The notes beneath the pieces are model-generated. The model had not been told where the DNA came from, did not search any database, and was given only the letters and a program-made list of their open reading frames with translations. DNA of 64,000 bases from Styela clava. Taxonomy: Eukaryota. Below are positions 24,323-34,497 of the stretch, piece by piece. The stretch covers positions 7,812,001 through 7,876,000 of the forward strand of contig NC_135261.1 in NCBI RefSeq assembly GCF_964204865.1, in the 5' to 3' direction. Position 1 is the stretch's first letter, and each line of letters starts with the position of its first letter. The translations under genes were made by a program, and so were the position numbers.

Positions 24323-26075
24323 TTTGTATTTATTTGGCTTGATAAGATGGCGGGAATGCATGCCGAACTCACTCGGAGGATTGTATATGTATTGATGGAA
24401 GAATGTAGAATTACTTGTATCCAATGACTAATGGAGTTATTAACTATCGAGAAGTTTGATGTTGACGTTTTTCGGTGTTTTTGTAGATGTGTGTTTTTAA
24501 ATGAAAACCATATACATTTAGAAATTCAACAAAAACCTGACGCTATGTGAAAACATTAAATGTCTTGCGTTATTTTTGATACATTATGTGTGTTGTTTGC
24601 CACAAGGAATGAACGACCATTTTGATCCAATACCGCACAAGTCTACAAAAACAGTCACGGTAACGGCATAAATGTCTACAAGCAATTTCATAGAATGGAC
24701 TAACAGTACAAATTTCCTTGAACATCATAATGAAATACTCATTTTTCATTCGCAATTTGACAAGAAATGAATATCCAATACGAAGCGAAGAAATTTCTTA
24801 CATTGATTTTAATAGAAATAGACCCGAGCAACTCTTGACAAACTATTGGACGTTTAGTAGATTTCTATTGAGAATTTCAATATTTATTGATTCACATTTC
24901 TCAATCTAAACATGCCAGAGAATCAGTCGAGAACATGTTGATTTTATGAAGCTGTTGACAAACACGACAATAATTTGTTCGATTGATTGGATGATTCACC
25001 GGTTTTTTAGAGTTTGTATTAATAGTTTATGAAACAAGTTCAAAATTCTTTAGACCATCTGTGTTCTAATCCTCATTTCTCAATTAAATTGAAGACCTAC
25101 TGAGTTCATTTCTATATTCTTATTCCTTCCGTATTTACTCCCATTCTGCAAGATTCCTACAAGTTACGTTACAATTATTGGCAAAATCTTTCACCTGAAA
25201 TCTAAAATTTTCAGAAAATTTACGTTCAACTCAATTTTATAAATTATATTTCGTAATGCTAAATTTTCAATACGAATAAACGAAAAATACTAAGTAATAG
25301 ATTTGTTGCATAAATCAAAGAAATGGAGAATATTGCTTCCGCTGTGATGGTCAGTGTAAAATACTTTCGTCAAAACTAGCCTCCAATCGTTTAATTGAAT
25401 TGGAGATGAGCAGAAAACATCTAATTAAATAATTGAATGAGTAAGCAAATCAAATTTAGGTAATTTAAAAACGAATATATATATTACATAATGATATGCA
25501 TTTTTCAGTTTGCGTTACATAGTTTCGGTTAGATTTGCATGTCTTCAATTCCGAAAAGGGTCATGAAGTCCTCGACTATTTTCTCTTATTCTTCTTCGAG
25601 AGCGGAACAGCTGGAAATATACATTTTTATTAGTAAAATTAGGCATGACCCAATGGTAACAAGTTACTCTCTCAATTCACTATTTTACTAATTCACTAGT
25701 CAATAATTTATCCATTTTAGGTTGAATTTTTTATGCATTCCGATTTCTCGAGTATGTTAAATAATTGTACGGAAACCTGGTAAATTGGTAATTATGGCTG
25801 ATATCGTTATGACATGAACCATATATCGGTATATTTTGGGTTTAAAATCTGATTTTTTTTTTAGCTGGAAAGTTAAGGCTACACCAGGACGTAATAAATT
25901 GAATAATCTATTAAGCCTACTTTAAGGCCTACTTTAAAATACCTCGTTATCTAATTATATACACGACATGGAATGAACGGATGAAAGGTCGTGGTTGTTT
26001 GTCAAGTTTGACACTCATTTGTTTGCTAAGTGAAGACTATCATCTTCTATTCAAATAAGTTACGGCAAATGCTAC

Positions 26076-29000
26076 TCACATTAATCGACAAAGGCAGCAA
26101 AATATCCCTCCGGTAAAGTCCAAATCAATGTCTCCACAACAGTCAAGGTCACAACAGTCAAGGTCACAACATTCAAGTTCACAACATTCAAGGTCACAAC
26201 AGTCAAGGTCACAACAATCAAAGTTGCAACATTCAATAACACAGCAACTGCAATCATTCGTCGAATCGTTCGAGCCTGTATGTACAGAGATAGTTACTTT
26301 CCAAAGAAACGTATCCCAACATGGGAGGAATATCTCCCAACGGAAGAAGTGAGCAGGGATTGTGCCTAGTATTTGTTGTAATATTACTAATAGTTTTTTT
26401 TATTTTTTCTATTATTACTATAATATTTATTCACGAACACATAATAAACTTGAACAAAAACAAGAGTGCGACTTGCGCACAACACTAGAAAAGTTTAAGA
26501 TAGTTACATGCAGGAGGGGGCGGATAAAGAGTTCCAAAATAAGCAAAAGGAGAAACTTGACAAAAAATATTGAAACACTGCGGCTTTAAAGAGACGAATC
26601 AGTGCATTAGATTGCAAAGTAGAAACATTAAATTTTAAAAAAAAACTGTATTTATAATACGTATACACACTGAAGAACCAAATGAACGCATTTTTCTAGG
26701 ATACCGTTGTTAAAATAATAAATTACTGTCGCTCTGCTCATACTTCTCAAGCTAAATCGTTGAATCAGCTGGTGGTAAATAGCAATGGCGCAGTAACAAA
26801 ATTGCATCACATATTGGAGAGGCTAATCTGTTTTTCCTCTTAAAATTTAATAAAACAACTCTAATGCAGTCTCTTTACTGACTACCCTATATTTTGGACG
26901 TATAGACAAAGGAGATTAAAGTATTTCTCATATTTAAAAAAAAAAAGCAAGGTTGTTTTTTTAACAACTGTACTGATTGTGGGATAGATTTCAATTTTGC
27001 ATTCTTTAATAGGAGAGGCTAATCTGTTTTTCCTCTTAAAATATAATAAATCAACTTTACTGCAGTCTCTTACTGACTACCCAATATTTTTGACGTATAG
27101 ACAAGGGGATTGAAGCACTTCTCATATTTTAAATTAAAAAAGAGCAAAGTTGTTTTTTCAATACCTGTACTGCTTGCGGTTGAGATTTCTATATTGCTCT
27201 CCTCAACTGAAAATAGAAGTTTGTGTTCAACATATCCAAATTAGATTCAACAATCGATAGTAAACATGCTGAAAAACTACGTCTTCAATGTTTATGTATT
27301 TACTATGCTGAGTATTTGGTACGCTCGCAGTGTGTGTACCATGTTAGTGTTAAGCCATAATTTTATTCTAATTTCCCACATTTTAGTTGTATTACGAGTT
27401 CGGGAACTGTGTGTGTTAGCCAAGTTAATATACCCTCTGTCCATAAGTTTCAGTCCCTTTACACAACTTGGTGTAAAGTAGGCGAACAAAATTAGTTACC
27501 TCCATATTGTTACACACACTTCTGGAGCGACAATTGTTTTTGTTTACTTGGTTTTTCATATGAAAAATTCTAATCCTAATGATATTGTGTAAAATCGTTA
27601 GGTAAAAGTCAAGGTATAGTATGTTTTAAATAAGATTAATATTATGCTTAAAAGCATTACAATTCTCAGAGACATTCGTTTCCTTCTTTAACTAACAGTA
27701 ATGTTTTACTGGTCATCCAACATTCAATAACTAGCCGATTTATCGATTTTTACCCCAGGCATTCGATTTGCAATACTAATTCAACCCAACATAAAAATTC
27801 AAAATAACATTTCGGATTCACCTTTGCAATTTTCACAAATATTAGCTTTATTCTTGTGATGAACTCCGGCACCCAAGCATTCGGCGCAAAAAGCTCTCTT
27901 GCATTTGTTACAAAAGCTGACAAAAATAAAATTTGAGGATGTTTTTATAGCAAGGACAAAAATAAGTTTCAATCAGTAGGTTTTATATCTCAATTGTTAT
28001 ATAAAGTCCGAGTCGTATTCTTCTGATCAATATCCCTTGCCCAAAATTAGATTTATTCAGTCTTGCTAAATGGCATTCCATTTTCGCCAAGTCATGTCCG
28101 ATATAAGCCAAGTGGTTTTAGGAATTGGATATTTTAAGAATAAGAATTATGTATCGTAAAGTAATCGATATTTTTGTCTCTGTCCATCTCGAGTCAGTTC
28201 CGAGTCTTCATATCACGGTATACGTCAAAGAAAAATTATCGAGCAAATGTATCATAATTGGACTAGTCATTCAGTCGCGATAAAGAATAAAAATAAAAAA
28301 TTTCACTCGAGGTATCTCTTTTCTTCTTTGGCTCTCAAGCTATTTCTAATATGCTAATATTCAATTAATTATCTTTTATTTGTTTTAATTTTACTTACTG
28401 AACCATTCCTTTAAATTTCTCTGTACATCGGCAGCATCTTGGTGCCGAGTATCCAATTTCAGCCTCGTATTGCAGATTGCTTTGTGTTGTGTATAATGGC
28501 CATTGATGACTTTGAATACCCAGTCCCTGTAATGAACGTGTACGTCATTTGCGTGCACGAGAAAGCAAATAAAGTGAAAAGAAAGAAAGAATTGAGAAAA
28601 TTGTAGAAAAACGAACTATATGCTAAAACTAGAAGCGTTTTTAAGCAAATGAAGCATATTTTACCTGAATTTTTTTTAGGCAGCTGTCGCAAACGTTTTG
28701 AGGCTTTTCGACGGGAAGATATGGGAGGCAAATTCGATTTTTACTACATTCATCACAAAAAACATAACCACAAGCCCTGCAGTTAATCCTAAAATATCAA
28801 AAAATACCTCGATAATGAATAGCTATGTTATTTCAAAAATAAACTTTTCATTATTTTAATTCAATCACGGATTGAAAAGTGATTAAATATATAGATATAT
28901 TCTTCCGAATAATGAGATGACTGCTTGAATATCTAATTTTATTTTAATGAAACAAATTAAAAAGTATCCATATTTTCCTAAAACCAAAATAATGAAAAAT

Positions 29001-29683
29001 CATCAAGAGATAAATGTGTAAATGAACACCTCACGGAATTAATATAAAAATTAAATAAGAGTTCATCTGCCTGACAGTACAGCTGATGATATAACCTACA
29101 ATACAATATCAGTATCTTAATATAAGAAATATGCTCCTACCTTGAGTCTATGAATACTGTCTCACAATTATGGCAATTCTGTACAGAGTCTGACTGAACG
29201 AAAGGAGGTTTCTTTTCCACCAAATCTAAATTTAAAAATACAAACCAAAAATATAAAAACGAAATGAGGTAGAGAAAACATACTTTATTTTGGAATGATA
29301 TTTTATCAGTTGAGCAGTTTTTCTGATCATGGCTATGGCAGGAGTCATTTGTCACAGAAACTAAACATTCAGTCATTAAGCAAATATTAATTTCTCTTTT
29401 GCAGTGGCATGCGTAGTCAATTAAAGTAAACATGTATAGTGTTGGAGTAGAGCGAAATATGACTGGCAGACTCATCGCAATTAGAATGTTTTAGCGACCA
29501 TTCAGGTTTGAAGAACTAGTGATCGTGACATAACTAGCATCTCGCTGAGACCCGAATGCGCTAAGATATAAACCGAAAATATCTCAATTATCTTCACAAA
29601 GCACGCTTTTGGTAAGTTTTCGTGTTTATGTTCACCCTAAAAGTTTCAAACTAAACAAAATAAAACGAAATCTTACGTGGCAT
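26076..29683 (-). CDS. Tandem atypical FYVE-finger protein with acidic di-cysteine repeat and CaaX end (exons 29677-29683?, 29141-29225, 28665-28788, 28399-28526, 27822-27916, 26076-26365)
   Basis: Five exons join in phase: LVEKKPPFVQSDSVQNCHNCETVFIDSRINCRACGYVFCDECSKNRICLP..QNVCDSCLKKIQGLG...APRCCRCTEKFKGMVHFCNKCKRAFCAECL..NICENCKGTIP...(CCxxx)8...IFCCLCRLM*. The start exon is uncertain. Confidence 0.85.
26136..26246 (-). repeat. 15-bp coding minisatellite (TGTTGTGACCTTGAC) encoding CCDLD-type units
   Basis: Eight units: CCVIE CCNFD CCDLD CCDLE CCELE CCDLD CCDLD CCGDI. Confidence 0.92.
26816..27200. repeat. Diverged intronic tandem duplication, period ~196 bp
   Basis: GGAGAGGCTAATCTGTTTTTCCTCTTAAAA begins at both 26816 and 27012, and homology continues through the unit. 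Confidence 0.85.
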
Positions 29684-30344
29684 TGTTGAATATCGTTGTA
29701 TCAATATTCTGCTGTAGCGTACTAAAGTCCACTCACCCAAACCTTACTATTTTACCCTGTCTGCGTATCCTCACAGATGTCGTAGGTTATACGTACTAAA
29801 AGCAAATGTTAGGCATACCACGATTGCGTATTAGCAATTTTAAAAGTAAATTTTAATTAATAGGAGAAATGGCAATATCAAGAATCATATCATGTTGTTT
29901 GTTAAACACATCGCATTGTTGATGAATCACCACTGAAATAACTTGCAGTGTTTTTATAATATTAGTTGCCGATATTCGAGCTTCACCATTTTGTGCCTGG
30001 CTTTTCGGCCCACGCAAGCTGGAGTGCCGAGATATGTTTAGCAACATTGCGCAACGCCATTATTTCATGTTTTGTTAATGTTTCATTAAAGTATTTCGTT
30101 ATCATAATTATTAAGTGGAGGCGAAGTTAAGAGTCCCAACGCACGTTAAAATTAGGGATCGCGTTATTTTGTTTGCGTTGAAAAATTTTGAGTTAGCCTC
30201 TCCTTCATTAAAAAAAATAACAGAACAATAATAATACAACTCTACAACAATACTCTAACAATAATAATACAACAAAGGGAACTTCACTTTCATCAAGCAA
30301 TCGCGACCATCGTTCCTCGTGTTTTATCGCATCGTCCATTGTTG

Positions 30345-30579
30345 GGTACTCCCGAAGTATGTGAACCAAGATAGCGGACACCGAAACGTAGTATGTGTAG
30401 GTTGGGGTTAGGCCATAATTTCAGTTGCAAATACTACGGGAGTCACTTGGCTAATCCCTGAACTGAACTCGTAATAAAACCTAAATATGAAAAATTGGAA
30501 TAAAATTATGACCTAACCCTCTCCTGGTACACATACTACATTCCTGTGTCCGCCATCTTGGTTGACATTCGGGAGTACC
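30345..30579. mobile_element. Family A MITE (Merlin-like)
   Basis: Ends GGTACTCCCGAA ... TTCGGGAGTACC with a perfect 8-bp TSD cattgttg. Confidence 0.8.
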
Positions 30580-30870
30580 CATTGTTGCTATTATTTTGTT
30601 TTCAACAATGATACATGGCTTCCGACAGTCTACAGATGGCGGGTTTATGTCCCGAACCTATGTCATCATTAGTATATATCGAGAACGGTGAATGAAACAG
30701 TATAAGTCAATGATATGAAAATTTGCTTAGGAAATATTTACAAGTCCTGATACTGAATTCAATATTTGTATAGCTATCAATGATGGCCATATATAGGCTA
30801 TAGACTCTGAGCTCCTATAAAATCAAGAGCATTCTCATAGCGTCACTCTCAATTTGCGTTGTTTACTTAA

Positions 30871-32056
30871 CGCTTTCGCTGCCAAGCCATATTCAACATT
30901 TTTCCAAAGTTTGAGAGTCATGTTTCCAAATGGCTATATTTTTAGAACCGTTTTAACCACAAAAAAAAATTATGAAAGTTGTTTTAGTTTTTTCAGAGCT
31001 ATCTAATGATCATTTTATTTGTGTTCTATAAGGCTCGATTGAAAAAATTATAATAACATTGGCGTGGTAAATGCACATATTCTGTATAATGGAGTCCGGA
31101 AAGATGGAAAAAAATTGAAAGATTTTATCCTCGATATATGCCTTGACTTGTTAAAATCTCGCTGGCCAACTCTTCGATATATCATGATTTCAATGTTCGG
31201 ATCGACGAACAAGAACCAAATATTTTTGGAGGGGTTGTGGTGTTGCTCTTTGCCCCGCACCATGTACAAAGTACAAGTTATATCGCATAAAAATACATAA
31301 TCGTTGACAGCCCCATATCGTTGTCTACTGTTCCTTCACCTAAATTTCCTGTTTATTTTCATTCACCCAAGTTTCTTTTATTTTTGTACGTTTTATATTT
31401 TCTGGTGTTGGTACAATATACAATTGGTCACGGCATCAGGACCAAAACATAATCGCCATTTGCCGTTTAACATCATTATTGCGTTGTCGCAACTTTTTGC
31501 CCATTGCTTTGTTCTCTCTGCTGGCGCCACCATATCGCCATAATCGTGCGCTGCGTAGAAAACGTCAGTCACGTCATCAACGACGTCACCGTAATCAGCG
31601 ATCGTGCGTCGACGCGACTCGTAACCAACGCAATTTAATAATATGAAACCATGAAGATACCAATGACATCCAAAAATGGCAAACTTAATTGACTATAACT
31701 CAGCGACAAATAAAGATGTCATATTTAGTTTAGAATCGATGGAAAGATATTTAAACAGTGCACATTTTTTTTTGGCGAGTACTTTGCTCTATCTTACATA
31801 AATTACGATATAATCGCGTATGAACCAGGCATAACCAATATCGATTTTTTTGCAAAATTCTCCGGTATATTTTGCTCATTTACACAAAATTTTCAAATAG
31901 CAATTATGTATTTTTATTTGTCAGTTAGCAAGGCAATTGATTGCAATTTCTGTCGATGTGAATATTGTTGAAATTGATCCATCCAACGTCGAGATATTGT
32001 GCAAGAAAAGGAGTCAGCTGCTTCGGCCACTATAGTGGCCCGTGGCAGCGAAAGCG
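30871..32056 (+). mobile_element. Non-autonomous piggyBac element with transposase C-terminal remnant
   Basis: TTAA on both sides and a 14-bp TIR CGCTTTCGCTGCCA. From ~31055 it encodes GVVNAHILYN...LKDFILDICLDLL, a piggyBac C-terminal motif. Confidence 0.85.
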
Positions 32057-32324: not shown

Positions 32325-34497
32325 CACTGGCCAACAAAAAAAAATTTTTTTCATGGTGCCTAAGATGTTTTAAACGTTTTTAGCACATTTGAGGGCGCTG
32401 ATTCCAGAAATGCTGTTACTTTTTCTCTATCAGGTCTAGTTTTTCCTCTATGGTATATCCCTCTCTGCAGGATGCCGATAGCTACAATAAAGATAGGCAA
32501 ATGAAGAAACAACATTTTTCTGTAATTTTATTGAATATATCCATGGAATCTCACCAAAATATTCACAATTGAAGCTGGAACTTGTAATAAATGCTAACTA
32601 ATAGATGTCATCGGCTATAAATTGACGTTTTACTGATTTTCTAAAATGAGGGGCCTCGGCATCATCGCGCTTGATAGACCAACAGTAGTCTGCAAGCATG
32701 GTGGAATCCCAACGACCTTGATAGCGAACTTCCATGTCGCTGATATCTTGATGGAAGCGCTCCCCTTGCTCATCGCTCACATCACCTAGATTTTCTGGAA
32801 AACGGGCAAGATGGCTATGTAAAAAATGTAACTTGATGCTCATATTTGCACCCAGTTGACGGAGACTTGTAAGTAGTGTTTCAGCAAGCTCTTTGTAGTT
32901 GGGCGCCTTCGTTTTTCCCAAAAAGAATTTTACTCCATTTGTAAACGCCGTCCAAGCCCTCAATTCTGTTCAATTCATAAAATTACAGTAAGTTACATCA
33001 TTCATTAACTTTCGAATCTGGGGTCCATCAAAAATTCCAGCTCTTAATTTTCCTGTGGTTAGACCTGGAAATTTCCTGCAAATATGTTTGAAACAGTCGC
33101 CATCTTTCTCAAGAGCCTTCACAAACTGTTTCATGATGCCAAGCTTTATGTGAAGAGGAGGAAACACAATTTTTGAACGGTCGACCAAAGGAGGAGCCAA
33201 AACATTGAGAAAGCCAGGAATCAACTCACTGCGCACAGGCCAATCTTTTTTTATCCAATGCTCTGTTCTTGCCCTGCTGTCCCACAAACACAAGAAGCAA
33301 GGAAATTTTGTGTAGCCACCTTGTAGCCCAAGGAGAAATCCAACCATTTTCAAATCGACACATATGATCCATTCATTGGTGCTATCTGTATGAAATTTTT
33401 TCCAGTGCAAATTTGATTTCATCATATTTTTCTTTGAGAGTTGTTGAATGACCTAGAGGAACTGATCCAAATAAGTTTCCATTGTGAAGAAGAACACATT
33501 TTAAACTTCTTTTGGAACTGTCTATAAAAAGGCGCCAATCTTGAGGATCATACTGTTGGACACCAAGCTGCCGCAGCAGGCCGGCAACGTTGTTACAATA
33601 TACTATGTCTTTTTCCTGAGTGAAATATGACAAGAATTCAATAGGGCGTTTTCTATAGAATGTTATGAGAGTTCCGGGCTGAAGTAGAATTTTTTCATTG
33701 AGTCTTGAAGCTAGAAGTTCAGAAGATTCTTTGAAAAGGTTGAGATCTCTAGTCAGATCATTAAGTTCTTCTTGAGAAAAAAGCTGTGGCAGTGAAGAAG
33801 GAGAAAACCAGATATCTGAAACAGTGCCCTCACTACTTTCAGTGGAGGTTTGATATTCTTCAGAGCAGGGCAATTCCAATTCGGGCAAGCCTTCAAACAC
33901 TGGAACAGGAATTTCATTGCAGTGTGGAATTGGCCTAATTGCAGACTCGAGGTTTGGATAAACCAACGATTTCCTGTTCTTCCTATTGATTCCCTTAGTG
34001 TTTATCTTGATCACCCAGCATTACTTTGAAGTAGGCAAGATAAGCAAACCTCACTAATTTACTGATCCCTTTCCTGTTGGATTGCAATGTATATTCTCCG
34101 CAAATATAGCAAAATACATTTGGATTGTTTGAACAATGTCGCCTAAGAGAAGATGTAGCCATACTTAATTTTTGCTCTAAAAATCTGCAACTCAACCAAA
34201 ACAATGCAGCCTATTTATTTCATGTCTGACTTCTATATATATAAAATGTGACTTCTATAAGGCGTGTGATGTCATAATCGTTTGGCATACATCACAATAA
34301 AAACCTACACTTTTAATTATAACGCTAAAATTCATATAGAAACGCCCCTAATTTTAAGGAAAAAAGGTATAAAATAGCAAATATTTCAAAAATTTGACCT
34401 GATGAGAAAAAACGAGTATGATTTTTGGACTCAGCACCCCCAAATTAATCTAAATCAGCGTAGAAACCTTGGGCACTAAAAAATGTGTTGGCCAGTG
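32325..34497 (-). mobile_element. Chapaev3-type (CMC) DNA transposon
   Basis: TIR CACTGGCCAACA, a 3-bp TAA TSD, and internal transposase homology. Confidence 0.85.
32598..34162 (-). pseudogene. Disrupted Chapaev3 transposase
   Basis: Motifs FCYICGEY, WRLFIDSSKRSLKCVLLHN, DLKMVGFLLGLQGGYTKFPCFLCLWDSR, LHIKLGIMKQFVKAL and SDEQGERFHQDI are split across four ORFs. An internal deletion follows DQDK. Confidence 0.85.

What the first reader, a model, noticed from the sequence alone, without database searches (positions are those of the whole stretch)
26076..29683. Hidden gene: two non-canonical FYVE fingers, an acidic (CCxxx)8 array and a CaaX terminus
Seen: the ORF track largely misses this gene, but five minus-strand exons splice in phase. 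They give two 8-Cys FYVE-like fingers, then CSCCVIECCNFDCCDLDCCDLECCELECCDLDCCDLDCCGD, and end in IFCCLCRLM*. Established: PI3P binding by FYVE needs WxxD, R(R/K)HHCR and RVC; here these read FVQSD, SRINCR or MVHFCN, and NVC or NIC. CRLM fits a CaaX farnesylation signal, with adjacent Cys residues as palmitoylation candidates. Inference: this may be a FYVE scaffold that swapped phosphoinositide binding for lipid anchoring, with a Cys/Asp array that is either multiply palmitoylated or a metal chelator. I do not recognise this architecture.
Basis: partly seen in the sequence, partly recalled or inferred. Interest (0 to 1): 0.8.

Follow-up and report, generated by a model that had tools for sequence, protein, structure and literature searches.

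The report
Sea-squirt double FYVE-like finger protein
This is a real, expressed sea-squirt (Styela clava) gene, already in RefSeq as an uncharacterised protein, that encodes two degenerate FYVE-type zinc fingers and a cysteine/acid-rich tail; the proposed CaaX lipid-anchor ending does not exist in the mRNA.

Summary
The gene is real. Spliced contigs from three studies define eight minus-strand exons, with the CDS at 29683 to 25586. The product is 233 aa and is identical to NCBI "uncharacterized protein LOC120330079 [Styela clava]".

Confirmed:
- The four FYVE-exon junctions.
- Finger 1 is a true FYVE fold (Pfam 51 bits; model matches endofin and EEA1) that lacks WxxD, R(R/K)HHCR and RVC.
- Finger 2 has the same eight-Cys register but only weak similarity.
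- The in-frame (CCxxx)8 array is expressed.

Wrong:
- The acceptor is 26275, not 26365.
- A 42-nt exon (27206-27165) was missed.
- A donor at 26080 removes "M*", so the protein ends ...CCLCRL-I-CSALEEE. There is no CaaX box.

At least three paralogs and one pseudogene on the same contig share the plan. They carry only CCDxDCC, so the array is a 90-nt (6 x 15) in-frame expansion unique to this gene. No relatives were found outside S. clava.

Best reading (inferred): a cytosolic protein without canonical PI3P binding, tethered to membranes by S-acylation of the conserved hydrophobic Cys cluster. The function of the array is open. This is a lineage-specific variant of a known kind and of modest interest.

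The parts
29677..29770 (-). Exon 1: 5' UTR (seen at least to 29770) plus start codon ATG 29683-29681; the CDS part is 29683-29677 (M, P, first base of H)
   Evidence: joint 29225|29677 in X2 and X3; X3 record 12 reaches 29770. No other ATG lies between 29770 and 29684. P0151 starts MPH.
29141..29225 (-). Exon 2: LVEKKPPFVQSDSVQNCHNCETVFIDS(R). This is the N-terminal half of finger 1, with FVQS in place of WxxD
   Evidence: Weak ungapped alignment to the endofin FYVE N-terminus, W to F and D to S.
28665..28788 (-). Exon 3: INCRACG...NVCDSCLKKIQ. This is the C-terminal half of finger 1 (FYVE core)
   Evidence: Pfam FYVE E 3.4e-10 for the exon alone. PDB FYVE domains match at E 8e-9 and weaker. 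Joints.
28399..28526 (-). Exon 4: linker GLGIQSHQWPLYTTQSNLQYEAEIGYSAP plus the start of finger 2 (RCCRCTEKFKGMV)
   Evidence: It is 66-76% identical in paralogs A and B.
27822..27916 (-). Exon 5: FCNKCKRAFCAECLGAGVHHKNKANICENCK, the rest of finger 2
   Evidence: Weak Pfam B-box/FYVE hits. All eight Cys are in register with finger 1 and with a FYVE profile.
27165..27206 (-).
   Evidence: joints 27206|27822 and 26275|27165 in X1, X3 and X5. Equivalent Ser-rich mini-exons occur in paralogs A and B.
26080..26275 (-). Exon 7: SNDSTND, then the CC-pair array, then GDIDLDFTGGIFCCLCRL. The acceptor is at 26275 and the donor at 26080
   Evidence: This exon occurs once in the genome.
26135..26236 (-). 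15-nt tandem repeat (TGTTGTGACCTTGAC = CCDLD) inside exon 7
   Evidence: TRF. It is 90 nt longer than the same exon of paralog B.
25400..25610 (-). Exon 8: (I)CSALEEE, stop TAA at 25588-25586, then 3' UTR. X1's contig runs about 91 nt beyond 25400
   Evidence: joint 25610|26080 in X1 and X5.. The ending is conserved as CSALEDE* and CSDLEDD* in paralogs B and A.
26276..26365 (-).
   Evidence: no joint at 26365. Only one low-depth unspliced X2 contig crosses it.

Best explanation
SHOWN. This is an expressed eight-exon gene of the ascidian Styela clava (RefSeq LOC120330079, named only 'uncharacterized protein'). It encodes a 233-aa protein with no signal peptide or transmembrane segment. The parts, in order, are:
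- a FYVE-fold zinc finger at the extreme N-terminus that has lost WxxD, R(R/K)HHCR and RVC and has a membrane-insertion loop two residues shorter;
- a conserved 30-residue linker;
- a second eight-Cys finger with the same ligand register but a hairpin five residues shorter;
- a Ser-rich acidic mini-exon;
- an acidic array of eight CC pairs;
- a hydrophobic Cys cluster (GGIFCCLCRLICS);
- an acidic end (ALEEE).
The gene belongs to a small family on one contig (paralogs A, B, C and a pseudogene) under moderate purifying selection. The array is a 6 x 15-nt in-frame expansion of an ancestral CCDxDCC and is found only in this copy.

INFERRED. The fingers no longer bind PI3P in the canonical way and probably act as protein-binding or non-canonical lipid-binding modules. 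Membrane attachment probably comes from S-acylation of the conserved distal hydrophobic Cys cluster, not from prenylation. This would resemble exclusively palmitoylated peripheral proteins (cysteine-string protein, SNAP25, GAP43) and RFFL/CARP2. The expanded acidic CC array is a recent low-complexity addition. It may add acylation sites or bind metal, or it may simply be tolerated.

The confidence given (0.45) is for the inferred mechanism. The gene model and domain content are near certain.
For: Gene model. Seven GT..AG joints appear in contigs from three studies, and one 973-nt contig spans exons 2 to 8. Exon peptides were derived. P0151 is identical to that model and is named by NCBI.

Finger 1. 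Pfam FYVE scores 51.1 bits against a cut-off of 27.8. The AF2 model has pLDDT 86-95 over residues 11-70. Foldseek matches endofin 3t7l at E 1.4e-5, TM 0.82 and rmsd 1.6 A, followed by EEA1, Hrs and Vps27.

Lost motifs. Among the 148 nearest non-family FYVE proteins, 121 have HHC[RK]xCG, 141 have R[VIL]CxxC and 86 have WxxD. The Styela proteins have none of these.

Finger 2. All eight Cys align with finger 1 with a single 5-residue gap. A FYVE profile aligns over positions 6-59 of 62, scoring 5.5 bits in P0151 and 13.6 bits in P0002.

Family.. dN/dS is about 0.3 over exons 2-5, and all 16 ligand Cys are kept.

Array. TRF result. The array is unique in the genome. No length variants appear in the contigs (table 4).

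Tail logic. The distal cluster and ending are conserved: GELCCCLCRI-I-CSALEDE and GELCCCLGGI-I-CSDLEDD. Paralog C instead has a Cys-bearing hydrophobic end, IGGGFLFFRECWIGF. The tail holds 21 Cys, 23 Asp/Glu and 1 Arg in 86 residues.

Precedents. Soluble proteins modified only by palmitate use a weak intrinsic membrane affinity (PMC3010063). RFFL combines a FYVE-like domain with Cys5/Cys6, which are needed for vesicle localisation (PMC12211564).
Against: No experiment or predictor of S-acylation was available, so the anchor is an inference from composition and conservation. The array has a net charge of about -20, which should disfavour approach to acidic membranes. Paralog A has lost two Cys of the distal cluster (CCCLGG). 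Loss of the PI3P motifs argues against canonical binding but does not exclude other lipid binding. Finger 2 is statistically weak: Pfam does not report it in P0151 and its pLDDT is 55-74. The tail is modelled at pLDDT below 50, so nothing structural is known about it.
Confidence: 0.45

Rival explanations
1. Metal chelator or buffer. The Cys/Asp/Glu tail (16 array thiols plus about 20 carboxylates) binds Zn, Cd, Cu or Fe, like metallothioneins or genetically encoded (Glu-Cys)n phytochelatin analogues. The expansion in this paralog would raise its capacity.
For: Composition: 21 Cys and 23 acidic residues in 86 aa. The protein is cytosolic, so free thiols must be either metal-bound or acylated. 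The acidic context is unfavourable for membrane contact. The expansion keeps Cys and acidic positions, and the only differences between units are D/E changes.
Against: There is no Pfam or NCBIfam metallothionein-type match. No related Cys array exists in 5.8 billion proteins. The paralogs manage with two CC pairs. No metal data are available. The units are about 89% identical, so the conservation may only reflect youth.
Confidence: 0.2
2. Pentapeptide-repeat-like beta-solenoid. Read as C-D-L-D-C, the array fits four of the five positions of the pentapeptide-repeat consensus. [quoted passage not shown]
For: The only four PDB sequences matching exon 7 at E<=10 are all pentapeptide-repeat proteins: designed 4yfo, QnrB1 2xty, and MCBG-like 2xt2 and 2xt4. 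CCDLD aligns to GADLN and xCNFx. The published consensus allows C at position 1, D/N/E at 2, L/F at 3 and D/E at 4 (PMC8145042).
Against: The E-values are 0.79-5.9, which is not significant. The Pfam Pentapeptide models give nothing at E<=10. Only 6-7 units are in register, against the eight or more contiguous repeats used to recognise the family. Position 5 is Cys, which lies outside the consensus. AF2 gives no strands, with pLDDT about 45, both with and without an alignment. The paralogs lack the periodicity.
Confidence: 0.05
3. One reading: a farnesylated CaaX protein (CRLM) with adjacent palmitoyl-Cys. It would be made from an mRNA that ends the ORF at 26076, for example by retention of intron 7.
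For: Read without splicing, the genome gives CRLM* here and CRIM* in paralog B.
Against: X1 and X5 contigs splice 26080 to 25610. No run shows depth in 25794-25990. The TGA is part of the GTGAGT donor in a phase-2 intron. Paralog A has GTAAGT and would read CLGGIM*, which is not a CaaX box. Exon 8 peptides are conserved. The NCBI model ends in CSALEEE.
Confidence: 0.03

Closest known systems
Canonical PI3P-binding FYVE domains (endofin/ZFYVE16, EEA1, Hrs, Vps27; Pfam PF01363)
   Same: Finger 1 passes the Pfam threshold, has the eight-Cys cross-brace, and its model superposes on these structures at 1.4-1.9 A.
   Different: WxxD reads FVQS, R(R/K)HHCR reads SRINCR and RVC reads NVC. The loop before the basic motif is two residues shorter. 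Canonical PI3P binding is therefore unlikely.
RFFL/CARP2 and RNF34/CARP1 (FYVE-like domain plus palmitoylated Cys pair)
   Same: These pair a degenerate FYVE-like finger with a Cys cluster that is needed for membrane or vesicle localisation (PMC12211564). This is the same logic proposed here.
   Different: In RFFL the Cys pair is N-terminal and the protein carries a C-terminal RING E3 domain. Here the Cys-rich part is C-terminal, there is no RING, and there is a second finger. No sequence relationship beyond the FYVE fold was shown.
DFCP1/ZFYVE1 and small tandem-FYVE proteins (for example hits P0017, P0007, P0011)
   Same: Two FYVE-type fingers in tandem. P0017, P0007 and P0011 are of similar size, 159-232 aa.
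   Different: Those proteins keep RRHHCR, RVC and WxxD in both fingers and lack the Cys/acid tail. They score only 59-64 bits against 101-102 for the family. The statement about DFCP1 rests on my own knowledge.
Cysteine-string protein (DNAJC5), SNAP25 and GAP43: peripheral proteins modified by palmitate alone
   Same: A hydrophobic Cys cluster in a soluble protein, with no prenyl or myristoyl signal (PMC3010063). Compare IFCCLCRLIC here.
   Different: There is no J domain or SNARE motif. The extra array here is strongly acidic, unlike the hydrophobic or basic context of known Cys strings. Acylation is untested.
Pentapeptide repeat proteins (Qnr, MfpA, AlbG; PF00805)
   Same: Five-residue periodicity with C, D/N/E, L/F, D/E at positions 1-4. 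These are the only PDB look-alikes of exon 7.
   Different: The match is not significant. There are fewer than eight repeats, position 5 is off-consensus, there is no Pfam hit and no beta-helix is predicted.

Membership tests
FYVE zinc finger (Pfam PF01363) | Profile match above the curated threshold | tested here: met
   P0151 residues 12-72 score 51.1 bits against 27.8, E 1.5e-13. Exon 3 alone scores 40.3 bits.
FYVE zinc finger (Pfam PF01363) | Eight Zn-ligand Cys in cross-brace spacing, and the FYVE fold | tested here: met
   Spacing is CxxC-x10-CxxC-x4-CxxC-x18-CxxC. The model has pLDDT 86-95 and matches 3t7l, 1joc and 1vfy at TM about 0.8.
PI3P-binding (canonical) FYVE | WxxD motif | tested here: not met
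   FVQS aligns to WVPD of endofin. The motif is absent in all family members, whereas 86 of 148 relatives have it.
PI3P-binding (canonical) FYVE | R(R/K)HHCR basic motif | tested here: not met
   The motif reads SRINCR in finger 1 and MVHFCN in finger 2. Of 148 relatives, 121 have HHC[RK]xCG.
PI3P-binding (canonical) FYVE | RVC motif | tested here: not met
   The motif reads NVC and NIC. Of 148 relatives, 141 have R[VIL]CxxC.
PI3P-binding (canonical) FYVE | Actual PI3P binding | not testable with these tools
   This needs liposome or PIP-strip assays.
Second finger as a FYVE domain | Significant profile match | tested here: inconclusive
   Pfam reports no second stretch in P0151 but does in P0002. 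An ad hoc FYVE profile aligns end to end at 5.5 and 13.6 bits with high bias. Exon 5 gives weak B-box and FYVE hits. pLDDT is 55-74.
CaaX-prenylated proteins | Cys at the fourth position from the C-terminus of the translated mRNA | tested here: not met
   The mRNA splices at 26080 and the protein ends CRLICSALEEE.
Pentapeptide repeat proteins (PF00805) | At least eight contiguous repeats fitting the consensus, and a profile match | tested here: not met
   There are 6-7 units, position 5 is Cys, no Pfam hit appears at E<=10, and PDB hits have E>=0.79. The consensus is from PMC8145042.
S-acylated peripheral membrane proteins | Thioester-linked fatty acid on Cys | not testable with these tools
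   Only composition and conservation of the distal cluster are available.
Metallothionein-like metal binders | Family profile match or measured metal stoichiometry | tested here: not met
   No Pfam or NCBIfam match was found for the tail. Metal content is not testable here.

The most novel reading that the evidence does not exclude
The tail may be a genetically encoded, membrane-tethered thiol/carboxylate metal chelator that a harbour-dwelling ascidian enlarged by slippage of a 15-nt unit. Less likely, the slippage created a pentapeptide-repeat-type beta-solenoid de novo. In either case a FYVE scaffold that has lost PI3P binding would place the tail on a particular membrane.
Probability: 0.15. 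Interest if true: 0.6.

Novelty: new variant of a known kind. Interest (0 to 1): 0.3.

Why it matters
If the inferred mechanism holds, this family would be a second, independent case, after RFFL/CARP, of a FYVE-type finger that gave up PI3P recognition and relies on Cys acylation for membrane targeting. It would also be a clean, datable example of a coding microsatellite adding six Cys-pair units to a functional tail. In practice the result corrects the gene's 3' structure, removes a false CaaX call, and shows that the protein is a species- or lineage-restricted uncharacterised family. It does not bear on a long-standing open question.

Tried and rejected
- Exon-by-exon Pfam gave FYVE only for exon 3 and nothing for exons 2, 4 and 7. 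NCBIfam gave nothing.
- The word search with exon 7 alone and with residues 148-233 of P0151 found no relative of the Cys array.
- The representative search with an exon-3 profile found only two family clusters, both S. clava. After them the score drops from 101 to 69 bits, into generic FYVE proteins.
- A group of hits with DKHNC in place of RRHHC looked like possible kin. They have a different, longer N-terminal half and keep RVC, so I rejected them.
- The pentapeptide-repeat idea was tested by PDB sequence search, Pfam and two AF2 runs and is not supported.
- Rfam found nothing in 25000-31500.
- Pfam found nothing for the transposase-like ORFs at 32598-34014.
- The search of earlier findings held nothing on FYVE.
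All searches of the window gene were made exon by exon. Full-length work used only the database proteins P0151 and P0002, which an exon-level search returned, and these were given by id.
Full report
**Observation**

The region was read on the minus strand and each candidate exon was translated separately. The genome is AT-rich at 33-40% GC and clearly eukaryotic.

It also found four DNA runs holding 78-94%.

Contigs of X1, X2, X3 and X5 (three studies) were laid on 25400-31300. They gave seven joints, each with CT..AC ends on the plus strand, which is GT..AG on the minus strand:
- 29677|29225
- 29141|28788
- 28665|28526
- 28399|27916
- 27822|27206
- 27165|26275
- 26080|25610

One 973-nt X1 contig runs from exon 8 through to exon 2. 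A 641-nt X3 contig runs from exon 7 to 29770.

The runs are only guessed to be RNA. However, intron-less contigs can only come from mRNA, because exon 7 occurs once in the 377-Mb genome, so no processed copy is known.

The Cys array is in frame and is transcribed.

Three points are wrong:
1. The acceptor of the Cys exon is 26275, not 26365.
2. A 42-nt exon (27206-27165, EESNIEISTASST) lies between finger 2 and the Cys exon.
3. The ORF does not end at CRLM*. A donor at 26080|26079 cuts between AT and G. The next exon starts at 25610 and reads (I)CSALEEE, with TAA at 25588-25586.

No run has depth in 25794-25990, so intron 7 is not retained in the contigs laid here. The TGA is simply part of the GTGAGT donor of a phase-2 intron.

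**The protein is already in the databases**

I searched exon by exon, and did not join my exons.

A profile of exon 3 from the window and two paralogs was run against 1.84 billion representatives. It returned two clusters at 101-102 bits, then a drop to 69 bits into ordinary FYVE proteins.

One of the two, P0002 (211 aa), is a full-length paralog. The word search with P0002 returned four proteins, all labelled Styela clava by NCBI or UniRef. Among them is P0151, "uncharacterized protein LOC120330079", 233 aa, on a contig of 21,360,319 bases. That is the length of the window's contig C16.

P0151 is residue for residue what the contigs imply, including VEESNIEISTASSTG and the end CCLCRLICSALEEE. 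The gene is therefore annotated but uncharacterised. From here on, P0151 and P0002 were used by id.

**Finger 1**

Pfam FYVE matches residues 12-72 at 51.1 bits against a cut-off of 27.8. AlphaFold2, run with a 40-row alignment, gives pLDDT 86-95 for residues 11-70. Foldseek places that part on several solved FYVE domains:
- endofin (E 1.4e-5, TM 0.82, rmsd 1.6 A)
- EEA1
- LM5-1
- Hrs
- Vps27
- RUFY1

The three PI3P motifs are all gone:
- FVQS aligns with WVPD of endofin.
- SRINCR stands where relatives have RRHHCR, with a two-residue deletion just before it.
- NVC replaces RVC.

Of the 148 nearest non-family hits, 121 keep HHC[RK]xCG, 141 keep R[VIL]CxxC and 86 keep WxxD. None of the Styela proteins has any of these.

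**Finger 2**

Its eight Cys align with those of finger 1 with a single five-residue gap. A FYVE profile built from the 148 hits aligns over positions 6-59 of 62. The score is only 5.5 bits in P0151 and 13.6 bits in P0002, with high compositional bias.

Pfam does not report finger 2 in P0151. Exon 5 alone gives weak B-box, ANCHR-like B-box and FYVE hits. Its pLDDT is 55-74.

I call it a FYVE-like duplicate by ligand register. It is not a demonstrated FYVE domain.

**The family**

Exon 3 finds paralogs on the same contig near 6.70 Mb, and a copy with stop codons at 7,614,438. Exon-wise tblastn and reading of the loci give the following:
- **Paralog A** is P0002. It ends ...DNCCDSDCCMLFCECMELGVAIGELCCCLGGI-I-CSDLEDD.
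- **Paralog B** ends ...DNCCDFDCCERIDFDIGELCCCLCRI-I-CSALEDE.
- **Paralog C** is more diverged. It ends GSDCCDDIIGSIGRCIGECIGGGFLFFRECWIGFNE.

Paralogs A and B also have a Ser-rich mini-exon. All 16 ligand Cys are kept in the window gene and in A and B. Over exons 2-5, dN/dS is about 0.3, with dS 0.22-0.49 (computed per exon and summed, with no joined sequence).

In paralog A the donor is GTAAGT, and an unspliced reading would give CLGGIM*, which is not a CaaX box. The spliced acidic ending is conserved in A and B. This settles the CaaX question.

**The array**

TRF finds a 15-nt period with 6.8 copies and 89% matches. Exon 7 is 196 nt here, against 106 nt in paralog B and 124 nt in paralog A. 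The excess over B is 90 nt, or six units, inserted where B has CCDFDCC.

The core units differ only at two third-codon positions, which change D to E or back. The contigs show no length variants. They do show D-to-E (26202) and D-to-G (26143) polymorphisms.

No protein in the 5.8-billion word index shares the array. Its DNA is unique in the genome.

The tail of 86 residues has 21 Cys, 23 Asp/Glu and one Arg. It is modelled without confidence.

**A side lead: pentapeptide repeats**

The only four PDB sequences matching exon 7 at E<=10 are all pentapeptide-repeat proteins. Read as C-D-L-D-C, the unit fits four of the five consensus positions given in PMC8145042.

The lead does not hold up:
- E-values are 0.79 or higher.
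- Pfam's models are silent.
- Only 6-7 units are in register, where at least eight are required.
- AF2 predicts no strands.

I keep it as a low-probability rival.

**Mechanism**

Shown: the protein is cytosolic, with two Zn fingers, no canonical PI3P pocket, and a Cys-rich tail. The part of that tail conserved in A and B is the distal hydrophobic cluster plus an acidic end.

Inferred: the distal cluster is S-acylated and tethers the protein to a membrane. Two precedents support this. Proteins modified by palmitate alone start from a weak intrinsic membrane affinity (PMC3010063). RFFL combines a FYVE-like finger with Cys5/Cys6, which are required for vesicle localisation (PMC12211564).

The acidic array is a recent addition. 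It could add acylation sites, bind metal, or be neutral. None of this could be tested here.

**Novelty**

This is a lineage-restricted variant of FYVE-type proteins. The gene is already annotated as uncharacterised and has no detectable relatives outside S. clava in the searches run. Those searches were limited to an exon-3 profile and word-index sensitivity, and no other ascidian genomes could be searched directly. Interest is modest.

**Limits**

- Only one read-laying run was allowed, so expression of the paralogs was not checked.

Noticed in passing
window 27329-27566 and 30325-30720: A dispersed repeat with inverted arms (27329-27401 against 30465-30537 at 81%; an internal hairpin 30359-30399/30528-30568 at 88%). 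Its summed contig depth in the RNA runs is enormous, up to about 60,000, with hundreds of contigs and many loose ends. It looks like an abundant MITE/SINE-like element that is co-transcribed in many genes. Similar sequence sits in an intron of paralog A. Rfam gave no match.
   Followed up: partly
window 26813-26967 and 27009-27161: A tandem duplication of about 195 bp inside intron 6. The copies are 71-92% identical and spaced 194-196 nt apart.
   Followed up: partly
G000:C16:6699000-6720000 (L010, L011, L013, L014, L016-L018): A cluster of three paralogs: A on the minus strand, and C and B on the plus strand. They share the two-finger plan. Paralog C has a different tail (GSDCCDDIIGSIGRCIGECIGGGFLFFRECWIGFNE*) and no eighth exon. 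B and C were not among the database proteins returned.
   Followed up: partly
G000:C16:7613487-7614623 (L012 7487-8623): A decayed copy of the family with in-frame stops in the exon 2 and exon 3 equivalents. It lies about 225 kb from the window gene and is probably a pseudogene.
   Followed up: no
P0001 (141 aa) and P0152 (128 aa): These are database isoforms of paralog A. P0001 reads into the intron after exon 3 and is labelled 'arrestin domain-containing protein D-like isoform X1', a name that its FYVE-only sequence does not support. P0152 starts in another frame upstream of exon 5.
   Followed up: no
window 32598-34204, minus strand: Three consecutive ORFs of 121, 151 and 210 aa, plus a 69-aa ORF, in a GC-richer patch. 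They look like one broken transposase-type gene. Pfam gives no match at E<=0.01.
   Followed up: partly
window 26143 and 26202: Polymorphisms inside the array in the RNA contigs: 26202 G>T (Asp to Glu; X2 and X3) and 26143 T>C (Asp to Gly; X5). There is also a synonymous change at 26118. No change in unit number was seen.
   Followed up: partly
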